Assembly: GCA_963924565.1 (NCBI GenBank)
Contig: OZ004608.1
Location: forward strand, 18,104,001-18,168,000
DNA from: Ascidiella aspersa
Lineage: Eukaryota
Direction: 5' to 3'
Length of the DNA stretch: 64,000 nt
Of this stretch, positions 61,401-64,000 are shown piece by piece (within the stretch, counting starts at the first letter, position 1; each line of letters begins with the position of its first letter). Below the pieces are notes generated by a model, which worked only from the letters and a program-made list of their open reading frames with translations, ran no database searches and was not told the DNA's origin. A program made the position numbers and the translations under genes.

Positions 61401-62825
61401 TAACGTTCACGAATGACAAGTATATATCAAACATTGTGAGAAAAACTGAACTTAATATAGGCGCCACCTTTGTTCCTCGTTTGAACTTTTAAGCCGTCAT
61501 AGTGCACAAATTGATTCACCTATCAAACCAGAAATACTTTGAGTTTGCAAAGGAGCGTGACATTTTTATTGTGTTTAAGGCCCGTGACGACCACATGTCG
61601 ACGCCCATACACGAGGCAGCGAAGCACGGCCACGCTGACATATTGCGCCTTGTTTTGTCCAACGCCAACAACTACTCCAAACTTCTGGATTGCAAAGACG
61701 ACAACGGGTGTACACCGCTAATCCTTGCTTGCAGGGATGGATTTAACGAGGTCTGTCCATAATTCAATCACATGTATTATAACTGATTTTTTCTTTATTT
61801 ATGAGATGATTTTAGGCCACCGCACGATAAAATGCTGGACGTTAATTCGAGAGGTTTCATTAGGCATCCATCACAGCAAAATATTTGTTGTATCTTTAAA
61901 ATTCAGGGTAACACGTTCCACATTTTTAAGGCCGCCGCCGTACTCCTGGAATTTGCCAGAAAAGTAAACTGTAGCGAGGTCGTATCTCGTTTGTTGGATA
62001 AGAACAACGACCTTGATACACCCATACACGTAGCTACTGAAAGTGGGTCGGTAGCTACCGTTCGCTTGTTGCTCGAAACATGGGACAAAGAAGTTGTACT
62101 GCTCACCAACCGCTACGATGAATTAGCAAGTAAGTTGCTTTAAATACAGAAACCTTAAAATAATAATATATTACAGCTAATCTTCGTACCAGCGAATTTT
62201 TGTGATGAATACTCTATGTTCAGAAGACCTTCCGAAATACATAGACATCAGACAAAAGCACGGAAACACCCCTCTTCACTTGGTTGCTCACCACGGAAGC
62301 TTGGAGACCCTCACGACGCTTTGTAACGGCAAACCTAACATCGAAGCACAAAACAATAACCAGGAAACGGCGCTGTGGATTGCAGCTCAAAGGAACAACT
62401 TAAATATTGCGGAAGCCCTGTTAAACATGCGAGTAACATTTTTACTTTAAACTGTAACTAAATGGGCACTGCCTGTAGTTGTTTTGAACGGGATAAGAAT
62501 GTATTTTGTAGTGAAACCGTTTACAGTGAGAAAGATTGAATTCAAATATTTGCAACTTTTTACGTAATGATATACAATTAAAGCGGCGATAGGTAGCATT
62601 TTTAATCGCTTTAGTCATTATTGATTTAAATTTACACACAGAGGTGCCAATATGGAAATGCGTAACGTGAGCGGAATGACGTCATTGATGGTGGCCTGTA
62701 GAGATGGCCATCCAGAAATTGTTAAACTTCTAATTGCCCGTGGTGCCAATACCAGTTGCATTGATGCAAAGGAAAGAAATTGCTGTATATTGGCGGCCGC
62801 CGAAGGAAGAACTGACATATTAAAA
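58417..62825 (+). CDS. Multi-ankyrin-repeat protein, probably a TRPA1-like channel N-terminus (incomplete; continues beyond the window, next acceptor near 63965)
   Basis: Exons 58417-58635, 59912-60035, 60441-60638, 61580-61750, 61931-62129, 62224-62428, 62642-62825 with consistent phases. Serial ankyrin motifs SPLHVAV, QPVHYAA, TPLHYAS, TPIHEAA, TPLILAC, TPIHVAT, TPLHLVA, TALWIAA, TSLMVAC. The ankyrin call is firm; the TRPA assignment is inferred because no TM domain is in the window. Confidence 0.8.
59439..59816. mobile_element. hAT-type MITE, 378 bp
   Basis: TIR CAGGGCTGCTGAGTCG / CGACACCGCAACCCTG; TSD gtttcctg/gttgcctg; subterminal GAGTCG/GACTCG repeats. Confidence 0.82.
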
Positions 62826-63061
62826 GTAATTAAATGTGCTTTTAATTGTCTATATTTCTAGAAAATATGATGTTTGTACCGAGACCTAAATCTAAATATT
62901 TTTGTAATGTTTTTTTTTGCAAGATTACCACTTTTCATGCATCACAACAGTGGGTATAGCAAACTCAACCTAAAACTATTTAATAGTACACCGAAAAGCC
63001 ATCGCAGACTCGCCGAAGCTTTCGATCTATGATGCAAGCAGAGCAAGCCAGAAAAACAACT

Positions 63062-63136
63062 CGCCTGCAGTGAGGTTCGAACTCACGACCTCCGGTCAAG
63101 CCGGGACCGTCGCTCTACCAACTGAGCTATGCAGGC
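63062..63136 (-). ncRNA. Second full tRNA-like copy (inverted unit)
   Basis: 74-nt body identical to 63651-63724; discriminator G instead of C; followed by the same T5 terminator. Confidence 0.8.
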
Positions 63137-63338
63137 TCAGAGAGGGGCGAGTCGAGAAACAACCATGCGCCAATACTTGCACATTTTGTTAGTACAAGCA
63201 ACTTCACACTGGGGAATCAACAGTCCGTATCAATCAATGAAAGACACACACAAACATATGTGTTTAATAACATCTGTGATCTAGCCCCTCGGAAGTTGCT
63301 TTATGACCAACGATTACGGCTTCCGGCTTTTGACGGCT

Positions 63339-63377
63339 TTTGACCGGAGGTCGTGAGTTCGAACCTCACTGCAGGCC
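63339..63377 (+). pseudogene. 3' half of a third tRNA-like copy, truncated at the inversion junction
   Basis: TTGACCGGAGGTCGTGAGTTCGAACCTCACTGCAGGCC, preceded by a scrambled GGCTTTTGAC duplication. Confidence 0.8.
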
Positions 63378-63650
63378 AGTTGTTTTTCTGGCTTGCTCTG
63401 CTTGCATCATAGATCGACAGATTCGGCGAGTCTGCGATGGCTTTTCGGTGTACTATTGATACGGAAGCCGTAATCGTTGGTCATAAAGCAACTTCCGAGG
63501 GGCTAGATCACAGATGTTATTAAACACATATGTTTGTGTGTGTCTTTCATTGATTGATACGGACTGTTGATCCCCCAGTGTGATGTTGCTTGTACTAACA
63601 AAATGTGCAAATATTGGCGCATGGTTGTTTCTCGACTCGCTCCTCTCTGA

Positions 63651-63725
63651 GCCTGCATAGCTCAGTTGGTAGAGCGACGGTCCCGGCTTGACCGGAGGTC
63701 GTGAGTTCGAACCTCACTGCAGGCC
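63651..63725 (+). ncRNA. tRNA-like Pol III gene with non-canonical anticodon arm (undetermined isotype)
   Basis: Acceptor GCCTGCA/TGCAGGC, D stem GCTC/GAGC with A box TAGCTCAGTTGG, anticodon stem CGGTC/GACCG with loop CCGGCTT, T arm GTGAG-TTCGAAC-CTCAC, T5 terminator at 63731-63735. Confidence 0.8.
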
Positions 63726-64000
63726 AGTTGTTTTTCTGGCTTGCTCTGCTTGCATCATAGATCGACAGATTCGACGAGTCTGCGATGGCTTTTCGGTGTA
63801 CTATTGATACGGAAGCCGTAATCGTTGGTCATAAAGCAACTTCCGAGGGGCTAGATCACAGATGTTATTAAACACATATGTTTGTCTGTGTCTTTCATTA
63901 AAACTATTTAAGTTTCCTAAGTTTCTGCAAACGTTAGTACTATTTTTACTCTCCATTTTTACCAGAACAGCCTGAGAGGAGGAACAAGGTTAAGTCAATA

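What the first reader, a model, noticed from the sequence alone, without database searches (positions are those of the whole stretch)
62971..63911. Tandem tRNA-like array moved as a tailless insertion with TSD and 5' inversion (twin-priming-like signature)
Seen: a 12-13-bp direct repeat (T)AAAACTATTTAA brackets the insert, and the left site reads CT|AAAA. The left segment is almost exactly one inverted unit sharing AA microhomology with the TSD end. The internal junction (63326-63345) has a stuttered GGCTTTTGAC duplication at the anticodon loop. There is no poly(A) and no ORF. The inverted unit differs from the direct ones at 7 sites and the two direct copies differ at 2 sites, so the donor was a heterogeneous array, not one monomer copied repeatedly. 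Established: TT|AAAA-like cut sites, 7-20-bp TSDs and 5' inversions with microhomology are hallmarks of L1-type target-primed reverse transcription with twin priming. Inference: a multimeric read-through transcript of a tRNA-like array was retroposed in trans, which would be a way for such arrays to spread. DNA-level capture during break repair is the alternative.
Basis: partly seen in the sequence, partly recalled or inferred. Interest (0 to 1): 0.78.

Follow-up and report, generated by a model that had tools for sequence, protein, structure and literature searches.

The report
tRNA-like retroelement inserted Penelope-style
This is a recent insertion, still absent from some individuals, of an abundant non-coding mobile element that carries a tRNA look-alike and is copied into DNA the way Penelope-like retrotransposons are, not the way L1 elements are.

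Summary
An exact 13-bp duplication (62971-62983 / 63899-63911) brackets a 915-bp insert with no poly(A) and no ORF over 52 aa. The insert is an inverted 344-nt arm, a 14-nt stuttered junction, and a direct arm of 1.6 units of 348 nt.

A contig in run X2 joins 62970 directly to 63899. I read this as the empty site, so the insert arrived as one event and is still polymorphic.

The L1/twin-priming reading is only partly right. The family has over 1,100 exact 31-mer hits. Its insertions have variable 5' ends and 10-14-bp duplications (15 of 22; 0 of 110 controls). Outward ends fall at only two places, each beside a copy of an 11-nt motif. All 13 two-armed copies carry one end of each kind.

A young resident Penelope-like element (785-aa RT plus C-terminal GIY-YIG) follows the same rule in 9 of 9 pairs, with 10-13-bp duplications. 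This matches the published Penelope "tail at one end" structure.

The unit-to-unit differences are private to this locus, so a heterogeneous donor array is not supported. Both arms share a rare variant, which points to one source.

I found no hammerhead core. The partner's tail similarity is not significant.

The scan had already met this family at least six times on other DNA of this genome, with the same reading.

The parts
62971..62983 (.). Left copy of the 13-bp target-site duplication
   Evidence: D4, 100% identical to 63899-63911. A single copy is present in the empty allele inferred from an X2 contig.
62982..63325 (-). Inverted arm, unit positions q1-q344 read on the minus strand. The outward end is of type B (..GGTGTACTATT) and the inner end is at the q1 hot spot.
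   Evidence: (I1). It has 5 private substitutions plus the shared rare q106T.
63062..63136 (-). tRNA-like module of the inverted arm
   Evidence: ARAGORN; Rfam RF00005 at 55.5 bits.
63224..63234 (-). 11-nt motif ATTGATACGGA (site-A copy) in the inverted arm
   Evidence: I8/I9.
63326..63339 (.). 14-nt filler at the inversion junction. It is part of a tandem 10-nt duplication (63325-63344) built on GGCTT microhomology.
   Evidence: Read directly; arm limits.
63340..63898 (+). Direct arm: q227-348, q1-348, q1-89/90 (1.6 units). The outward end is of type A (..GTCTTTCATT).
   Evidence: (D1).
63455..63465 (+). 11-nt motif, site-B copy (a unit boundary inside the direct arm)
   Evidence: D3.
63553..63563 (+). 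11-nt motif, site-A copy (internal)
   Evidence: D3.
63651..63725 (+). tRNA-like module of the direct arm, followed by TTTTT
63803..63813 (+). 11-nt motif, site-B copy (second unit boundary)
   Evidence: D3.
63899..63911 (.). Right copy of the target-site duplication
   Evidence: D4.
62652..62825 (+). Context: ankyrin-repeat exon ending about 158 bp before the insertion, which therefore probably lies in an intron
   Evidence: Pfam Ank_4 1e-9 and Ank 3e-9.

Best explanation
The insert is one copy of an abundant, recently active, non-coding retroelement with a 348-nt unit. Each unit holds an internal tRNA-like module and two copies of an 11-nt motif.

The element is mobilised in trans by the reverse transcriptase and GIY-YIG endonuclease of a Penelope-like element (PLE). 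The endonuclease makes nicks staggered by about 13 bp, and both exposed 3'-OH ends prime cDNA synthesis on element RNA.

One primer starts at site A (q~89-94). The other starts at site B (q~339-345), 93 nt upstream. Each site lies at the 5' edge of a motif copy.

The two cDNAs grow towards each other across one or more units and are joined by microhomology. Here the join is at GGCTT, with a 10-nt stutter. The result is the head-to-head, two-armed, TSD-flanked structure.

Shown here: the anatomy, the family-wide rules, the parallel in a resident autonomous PLE, and the insertion polymorphism.

Inferred: that a PLE enzyme did it, that the motif is the initiation signal, and that the template is a linear multimeric RNA.
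For: 1. Family and ends. A 31-mer of the tRNA half has 603 + 585 exact matches in the genome against 0 for the control. In 24 complete insertions, every outward end lies at q88-94 or at q331-347, and 5' ends vary.
2. Heterotypic ends. 13 of 24 insertions are two-armed. All 13 are head-to-head and all 13 carry one A end and one B end. If end types were independent, P = 1.2e-4.
3. TSDs. 15 of 22 insertions have TSDs of 10-14 bp (mode 13), against 0 of 110 shifted controls. All 10 well-preserved two-armed copies have 13-14 bp.
4. Resident PLE 'Fam B'.
- The ORF is 785 aa, with RVT_1 followed by a C-terminal GIY-YIG.
- Copies are about 99% alike, with a tandem period of 3,422.
- 3' ends fall at two sites about 80 nt apart, and 9 of 9 adjacent head-to-head pairs carry one of each.
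- TSDs are 10-13 bp in the 2 of 2 pairs I read.
5. Literature. PLE insertions are described as partial tandems plus an adjacent inverted 5'-truncated copy, with a 'tail' at only one end. Non-autonomous derivatives give multicopy head-to-tail insertions (PMC8557442, passages). PLE terminal repeats suffice for mobilisation in trans, with 8-10-bp TSDs and a 31-bp tail on one inverted repeat (PMC3846280, passages).
6. One event, recent. An X2 contig of 1,699 nt joins 62912-62970 directly to 63899 onward, which is the empty site with a single TSD copy (tables 2, 3 and 8).
7. Same source for both arms. Both carry q106T, whose 33-mer has only 4 matches in the genome.
8. Genome-wide ends. Loose ends of raw DNA reads pile up at the A and B positions, with diverse AT-rich continuations (table 7).
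Against: - No autonomous element with a convincingly homologous 3' end was found. The element's 93-nt B-to-A segment aligns collinearly with the 84-nt tail of Fam B, but not above shuffles (91-177 of 1,000 shuffles score as high). Predicted folds of the two tails differ and are not exceptional.
- The canonical PLEs sampled here carry a CUGAUGA..GAAA hammerhead core near their 3' ends. The element has no CUGANGA on either strand.
- Two other PLE families (L049, L051) have two-armed copies with like ends, so the one-of-each rule is not universal among PLEs.
- APE-type LINEs with long open frames are present, and I could not compare their 3' ends.
- RNA reads show only low, strand-symmetric, mostly read-through coverage. 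No discrete template RNA was seen.
- The empty allele is inferred from three concordant table entries. The joint itself was not in the rows shown.
- The filled-allele contigs of X1 reach only 24-25 nt into the element, below the tool's 31-letter bridging rule.
Confidence: 0.78

Rival explanations
1. An L1/APE-type LINE retroposed a multimeric read-through transcript, and classical twin priming produced the 5' inversion.
For: - The TSD length of 13 bp lies within the L1 range.
- Several target sites start with AAA(A), including this one.
- APE-type LINEs with open frames of about 998-1,042 aa in several copies are present.
- The head-to-head geometry is what twin priming gives.
Against: - There is no A-rich or microsatellite tail.
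- The outward end of the inverted arm is never at a variable internal position. It is at one of two fixed sites, always the one not used by the other arm (13 of 13).
- TSD length is tightly 13-14 bp in two-armed copies, not 7-20.
- The pooled nick context is A|(G/C)T on both strands.
- 54% of copies are two-armed. From recall, not from a call, this is far above what is reported for L1.
- The same anatomy is seen in a resident GIY-YIG element.
Confidence: 0.07
2. The enzyme is the same (PLE-type), but the template is a circular monomer RNA copied by rolling-circle reverse transcription, as proposed for retrozymes. The tRNA-like module would replace the hammerhead as the processing and ligation handle.
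For: - Insertions hold from 0.25 to more than 10 perfectly periodic units.
- Animal non-LTR retrozymes are tandem, of similar size, thought to depend on PLEs, and circularised by a tRNA ligase (PMC7229834, passages; preprint 10.64898/2026.07.22.740005, abstract only).
- No junction of the type 'site A joined directly to q1' was seen on one strand. Arrays are therefore not built by end-to-end jumps between short linear RNAs.
Against: - There is no self-cleaving motif: no CUGANGA and no Rfam ribozyme at E<=1. That scan also misses the PLE hammerheads here, so it is a weak negative.
- 5' ends cluster at q1-5 in 8 of 37 arms (P = 7e-7 for 7 of 36 without the window copy). A circle has no 5' end, although a roadblock at the ligation site or a bound protein could mimic one.
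- Neither site A nor site B coincides with the tRNA-like module's ends (q190, q264).
- Tandem genomic arrays can supply multimeric linear transcripts.
Confidence: 0.12
3. A DNA-level event: capture of array DNA during double-strand-break repair, or a Helitron, rolling-circle or foldback DNA transposon with fixed termini.
For:
- The junction shows repair-like microhomology and stutter.
Against: - TSDs are regular at 10-14 bp, whereas Helitrons make none.
- The inner ends are variable, as in 5' truncation.
- Both fixed ends are sense-strand 3' ends pointing outward, not one 5' and one 3' terminus.
- There are hundreds of dispersed copies with the same rules.
- No transposase or Rep gene is associated with the element in the loci I read. 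I ran no domain search for one.
Confidence: 0.03

Closest known systems
Penelope-like elements (EN+ PLEs) and their insertion structure (Evgen'ev & Arkhipova; Craig et al. 2021, PMC8557442; Arkhipova et al. 2013, PMC3846280)
   Same: - Partial or multiple head-to-tail copies, with an adjacent inverted 5'-truncated copy lying head-to-head.
- An extra stretch ('tail') at only one of the two outward ends.
- Short TSDs, AT-rich targets and frequent 5' truncation.
- Mobilisation of foreign sequence in trans.
   Different: - There is no RT/EN gene and no hammerhead core.
- The offset between the two ends is 93 nt, against the published 30-40 bp (84 nt in the resident Fam B).
- TSDs are 13-14 bp, against 8-10 bp in Adineta vaga.
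- Each unit carries a tRNA-like module.
Non-autonomous PLE derivatives: Chlamys-dependent MRC1 and similar elements in Chlamydomonas (PMC8557442); short non-autonomous Penelope elements in butterflies (PMC6685494, one passage)
   Same: [quoted passage not shown]
   Different: The published cases share recognisable 3' ends with an autonomous family. Here that similarity is not significant. None of the passages I read mentions a tRNA-like module.
Animal non-LTR retrozymes (Cervera & de la Pena 2020, PMC7229834)
   Same: Tandem units of 170-400 nt, low GC, TSDs longer than 4 bp, and a proposed dependence on PLEs.
   Different: Retrozymes are defined by a type I hammerhead in every unit and by circular RNAs. 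This element has no hammerhead core, and circles could not be tested.
tRNA-derived SINEs with LINE partners
   Same: Short and non-coding, with a tRNA-related module carrying A- and B-box-like sequence, mobilised in trans, and present in hundreds to thousands of copies.
   Different: - The tRNA-like module is internal (q190-264), not the 5' head of the inserted copy.
- It is followed at once by TTTTT.
- There is no LINE-type tail, the copies are multimeric, and the insertions are two-armed.
L1 twin priming (5' inversions of L1 and Alu).
   Same: Both target 3' ends prime on RNA, giving a head-to-head inversion joined by microhomology inside one TSD.
   Different: In L1 the second priming site is set by chance microhomology and varies. 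Here it is one of two fixed sites, and always the other one.

Membership tests
PLE-mobilised non-autonomous retroelement | Head-to-tail (partial tandem) copies made at insertion | tested here: met
   Arms span 0.25 to more than 10 units inside single TSD-flanked insertions.
PLE-mobilised non-autonomous retroelement | Adjacent inverted 5'-truncated copy, head-to-head | tested here: met
   13 of 24 complete insertions are two-armed, and all 13 have their 3' ends outward.
PLE-mobilised non-autonomous retroelement | Extension ('tail') at only one outward end | tested here: met
   13 of 13 two-armed copies have one A end and one B end, 93 nt apart. The resident PLE Fam B shows this in 9 of 9 pairs.
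PLE-mobilised non-autonomous retroelement | Short TSD | tested here: met
   15 of 22 insertions have 10-14 bp, against 0 of 110 controls.
PLE-mobilised non-autonomous retroelement | Autonomous EN+ PLE present and young in the same genome | tested here: met
   62 GIY-YIG matches. Fam B has a 785-aa ORF with RVT_1 (24.2 bits, below the 29.6 cut-off) and GIY-YIG (26.8 bits, above the 22.6 cut-off). Its copies are about 99% alike.
PLE-mobilised non-autonomous retroelement | 3'-end sequence shared with the autonomous partner | tested here: inconclusive
   The alignment with the Fam B tail is collinear but reached by 9-18% of shuffles. blastn with word size 7 against 28 PLE loci found only inserted copies of the element.
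Non-LTR retrozyme | Type I hammerhead ribozyme in each unit | tested here: not met
   No CUGANGA on either strand of a unit dimer. No Rfam hit at E<=1, although that scan also misses the PLE hammerheads here.
Non-LTR retrozyme | Circular RNA of unit length | not testable with these tools
   Tandem DNA gives the same read joints as a circle would, and the single read-laying run cannot tell them apart.
L1-type (APE LINE) dependent SINE with twin priming | A-rich or LINE-derived 3' tail | tested here: not met
   Ends read ..TTTCATT or ..GTACTATT with no A run.
L1-type (APE LINE) dependent SINE with twin priming | Second priming site variable, set by microhomology | tested here: not met
   The ends are fixed and of unlike type in 13 of 13 two-armed copies.
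L1-type (APE LINE) dependent SINE with twin priming | TT|AAAA-like target | tested here: inconclusive
   Across 15 sites, the base before the nick is mostly A and the bases after it are G/C then T. Several sites do start with AAA(A). The sample is small.
Canonical tRNA-derived SINE | tRNA-related Pol III head at the 5' end of the retroposed copy | tested here: not met
   The module sits at q190-264. 5' ends cluster at q1-5 and are otherwise scattered, not at about q180-190.
Helitron / DNA transposon | Fixed 5' and 3' termini with no TSD or a short fixed TSD | tested here: not met
   Both fixed ends are 3' ends, the inner ends vary, and the TSD is 10-14 bp.

The most novel reading that the evidence does not exclude
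The 11-nt motif present twice per unit is the cis-signal at which a Penelope-type reverse transcriptase both starts cDNA synthesis (just 5' of the motif) and stalls (just 3' of its GATA).

The two 3'-OH ends of one staggered break prime at neighbouring signals of a single multimeric RNA, which is why one end is always A and the other always B. The long-unexplained 'tail at one end' of Penelope insertions would then be the stretch between two adjacent initiation signals.

This 348-nt element would be a minimal natural substrate that defines that signal.
Probability: 0.25. Interest if true: 0.65.

Novelty: new variant of a known kind. Interest (0 to 1): 0.4.

Why it matters
How Penelope-like elements integrate is still unsettled, and the reviews I read call for an in vitro system (PMC8557442). 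This element is small, abundant, very young and non-coding. It obeys the same two-end rule as a resident autonomous element, so it offers a compact substrate.

It gives clear numerical rules for testing models of dual priming:
- one end of each type per two-armed copy;
- a 13-14-bp stagger between the nicks;
- a 5' stop at q1.

It also shows that a tRNA-bearing element that looks like a SINE need not depend on a LINE. That matters for repeat annotation in marine invertebrate genomes.

For this particular locus the result is ordinary. It is one more polymorphic copy, probably intronic, of a family the scan already knew.

Tried and rejected
- Ribozymes. Rfam at E<=1 over 62000-64000 gave only tRNA and two chance plastid-UTR hits. 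The same scan on four PLE loci found nothing, although hammerhead cores are visible there. I therefore rest the absence of a hammerhead on the missing CUGANGA, not on Rfam.
- Partner by sequence. blastn of the unit against 28 PLE-bearing loci gave only inserted copies of the element. Local and global alignments with the Fam B tail were not significant.
- Shared hairpin. The apparent GGAAG/CTTCC versus AGAAC/GTTCT pairing is not in either minimum-energy fold, and neither fold is exceptional (z = -1.6 and 0.0). I dropped it.
- Larger unbiased survey. Only the first 10 places on contig C1 were fetched.
- RNA evidence. The RNA run shows the element only at low depth, equally in both orientations and mostly continuing into flanks. 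I obtained no discrete ends, no strand and no test for circles.
- Literature. Searches for a PLE-dependent tRNA-bearing SINE and for the Ciona SINE Cics-1 (a name recalled, not from a call) returned nothing specific. This covers the held library only. Supplementary files, such as the PLE consensus sets of PMC8557442, were not consulted and could contain this family or its partner.
- Rows dropped before the counts:
  - L012 (N gap inside the insert);
  - L039 (runs off the locus);
  - L064 (decayed fragments);
  - L061 and L066 (local duplicates of L060 and L065);
  - L036 (same place as L044);
  - L001 (the window itself);
  - loci overlapping the same arrays.
- Sampling. L002-L030 are the top-scoring hits and so are biased towards full units. 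L059-L068 are the first places in coordinate order.
Full report
**What is there.** An exact 13-nt direct repeat, TAAAACTATTTAA, lies at 62971-62983 and 63899-63911. Between the copies are three parts:
- an arm at 62982-63325, the reverse complement (344 nt, 98%) of 63462-63805;
- 14 nt of filler at 63326-63339;
- a direct arm at 63340-63898 with a 348-nt period (99% between successive copies).

The filler belongs to a perfect tandem duplication of GGCTTTTGAC (63325-63334 and 63335-63344). The pentamer GGCTT occurs at the inner ends of both arms, so the arms were joined at a microhomology with a stutter.

Each full unit contains a tRNA-like module: 63062-63136 on the minus strand and 63651-63725 on the plus strand (Rfam tRNA 55.5 and 54 bits; ARAGORN Ala-GGC). 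TTTTT follows the module directly. There is no A run at either end, and no ORF above 52 aa overlaps the insert. An ankyrin-repeat exon ends at 62825, so the insert probably lies in an intron.

**The family.** I define unit positions q1-q348 on window 63462-63809. The unit matches 178 places at 84-100% identity, mostly 97-100%, among the 40 scored of 2,497 candidates. A 31-mer from the tRNA-like half has 603 forward and 585 reverse exact matches in the 308.6-Mb assembly, and the reversed control has none.

I mapped every copy in the loci I held, which gave 24 complete insertions. Their outward ends fall in only two narrow windows:
- site A, q88-94 (..GTCTTTCATT);
- site B, q331-347, mostly q339-345 (..GGTGTACTATT).

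Both sites lie at the 5' edge of an 11-nt motif, ATTGATACGGA, which occurs exactly twice per unit (q92-102 and q342-352). Inner (5') ends are scattered.

Thirteen of the 24 insertions are two-armed. All 13 are head-to-head with 3' ends outward, and all 13 have one A end and one B end (P = 1.2e-4 if the end types were independent). The window copy is a normal member, with a B end on the left and an A end on the right.

Raw DNA reads from run X23 agree genome-wide. Loose ends pile up at the A positions (63550/63551, and 63236/63237 on the inverted arm) and at the B positions (63444/63452), and their continuations are diverse and AT-rich (table 7).

**Target duplications.**
- A flanking direct repeat of 10-14 nt (mode 13) is present in 15 of 22 insertions. 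It is absent from all 110 shifted-window controls, whose maximum is 9.
- The ten well-preserved two-armed copies all have 13 or 14 nt.
- The seven without a clear TSD are five single-armed copies, 5'-truncated or decayed, and two old two-armed copies (L021-old, 9 nt; L068, 7 nt).
- I aligned 15 reconstructed empty sites with the A end, or the only 3' end, on the right. The base before each nick is mostly A, and the bases after it are G/C then T, on both strands.
- This sample is small, and 1-2 nt of microhomology blur the boundaries.

**Empty allele.** In run X2 (same organism label and same study as X1), a contig of 1,699 nt and depth 96.1 lies on 63899-64000 from its 60th letter (table 8). 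A piece of the same depth covers exactly 62912-62970, which is 59 letters. Two entries support this:
- table 2 gives bin 62908-62958 a value of 88.5, which equals 96.1 x 47/51;
- table 3 puts the variant at 62960 eleven letters from that piece's end.

The contig therefore joins the left flank to a single TSD copy and the right flank. I infer this from three concordant entries, because the joint was not among the 15 of 157 rows shown.

X1 contigs enter the element from both flanks, but by only 24 and 25 letters. That is below the tool's 31-letter bridging rule, and X1 may be the assembled sample. The insertion is therefore polymorphic, and the two arms came in together.

**Donor.** Compared with 54-71 other copies, depending on position (from 91 aligned segments), the window copy has these differences:
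- 5 private substitutions in the inverted arm;
- 3 private substitutions in the full direct unit;
- 1 private substitution in the terminal partial unit;
- one rare variant, q106T, shared by both arms.

Exact-word counts show that the private combinations exist only here (1 match each). The q106T word has just 4 matches in the genome.

So there is no donor array with these differences in the assembly. The differences are reverse-transcription errors or later mutations. The flanks carry 15 variable positions within about 410 nt among the runs, so the species is very polymorphic. The shared rare variant indicates one source lineage for both arms.

**Who did it.** The genome holds many GIY-YIG matches (62). 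These belong to several young PLE families. One, which I call Fam B, has these properties:
- a 785-aa ORF with RVT_1 followed by a C-terminal GIY-YIG;
- copies about 99% alike;
- a tandem array of period 3,422 on contig C2.

Its insertions have the same anatomy as the tRNA-like element. A query ending at its 3' terminus finds ends either at the terminus (A') or about 80 nt upstream (B'). All 9 adjacent head-to-head pairs among the 43 matches carry one of each. In the two pairs I read, the TSDs are 10-11 and 12-13 nt.

This is the structure published for Penelope-like elements. The published features are:
- partial tandems;
- an adjacent inverted 5'-truncated copy;
- a 'tail' often present at only one end;
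- non-autonomous derivatives that make multicopy head-to-tail insertions (PMC8557442, passages read);
- a 31-bp tail on one inverted repeat, 8-10-bp TSDs and mobilisation in trans by the terminal repeats alone (PMC3846280, passages read).

I conclude that a PLE-type enzyme, not an L1-type one, made this insertion.

**Weak points.**
- I could not show that Fam B itself is the partner. The 93-nt B-to-A segment of the element aligns collinearly with Fam B's 84-nt tail, but 9-18% of shuffles score as well.
- A tempting compensatory hairpin is not in the predicted folds.
- Two other PLE families have two-armed copies with like ends.
- The sampled PLEs carry a CUGAUGA..GAAA hammerhead core near the 3' end, whereas the element has no CUGANGA at all.
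- Rfam misses those PLE hammerheads even at E<=1, so its silence on the element counts for little.
- APE-type LINEs with open frames of about 1,000 aa exist.

**Mechanism proposed.** The inferred steps are:
- The endonuclease nicks both strands about 13 bp apart.
- Each 3'-OH primes on element RNA immediately 5' of a motif copy.
- The two primers use neighbouring signals, A and B, hence unlike ends.
- The two cDNAs run towards each other and are joined by microhomology.

A further regularity fits a bound protein or a primer acting as a roadblock at the signal. 5' ends cluster at q1-5, just after the GATA of the site-B motif, in 8 of 37 arms (7 of 36 without the window copy; P = 7e-7). This includes three A arms that are only the 90-nt B-to-A stretch (L044, L059, L065).

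Whether the template is a linear multimer or a circle is open. No direct join of site A to q1 was seen on one strand, which argues against end-to-end jumps between short RNAs. The q1 peak argues mildly for linear molecules.

The RNA run shows only 382 reads, with equal depth in both orientations, and 77% of them continue into unlike flanks. This looks like read-through transcription and settles nothing.

**Standing.** The scan had already met this family on other DNA of the same genome at least six times, with the same Penelope-style reading (notes s1-801663, s1-790960, s1-801627, s1-787237, s1-788680, s1-790928). I had reached that reading before opening the notes, and I tested it independently here. 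This report adds:
- the empty allele;
- the one-of-each end rule with its parallel in an autonomous PLE;
- the q1 stop;
- the evidence that both arms came from one source;
- the nick context;
- the failed positive control for Rfam.

The locus itself is an ordinary family member. The family is a new variant of a known kind: a non-autonomous, PLE-type element with a tRNA-like module and no ribozyme.

Noticed in passing
window 62652-62825: An ankyrin-repeat exon (Pfam Ank_4 1e-9) with a GT just after it. The insertion lies about 158 bp downstream, so it is probably intronic. No RNA reads cover the exon in run X24.
   Followed up: partly
one search run table (no coordinates): Runs labelled as eight other organisms, and as seawater, sediment, microbial-mat and marine metagenomes, hold 0.22-0.34 of the sampled words, roughly the share made up by the repeat unit. 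Either the element occurs beyond this species, or this animal's DNA is common in marine samples.
   Followed up: no
G000 C2:30628151-30641023 (L055 covers part): A tandem array of at least four 3,422-bp units of an autonomous Penelope-like element, plus an inverted arm ending at the short site. An apparently intact 785-aa ORF of the same family is at L046:3034-5391.
   Followed up: partly
L060/L061 (C1 ~0.65 Mb and ~0.66 Mb) and L065/L066 (C1 ~2.372 Mb and ~2.380 Mb): Two pairs of loci, 11.7 kb and 7.8 kb apart, carry insertions with identical arm limits. These look like local segmental duplications that copied an existing insertion.
   Followed up: no
L043, L045, L049, L051: The Rfam covariance models report nothing at E<=1 on PLE loci, although CUGAUGA..GAAA hammerhead cores are readable about 75-150 nt before the 3' ends. 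Minimal PLE hammerheads escape this scan.
   Followed up: partly
window 63347 (table 7): Eight RNA reads carry the same 13 loose letters before 63347 (agreement 0.94). This implies an expressed copy or subfamily with a different anticodon arm.
   Followed up: no
unit positions q141-146 (L017, L065, L062; rows C1:10656054 and C4:25352161): A second, weaker cluster of 5' ends lies about 45-50 nt upstream of the tRNA-like module. It is unexplained.
   Followed up: no
G000, e.g. C3:24732003, C3:36857642, C2:5237740, C1:30466573: APE-type LINE endonuclease domains sit inside open frames of about 998-1,042 aa in several copies, so LINEs that may be active coexist with the PLEs.
   Followed up: no
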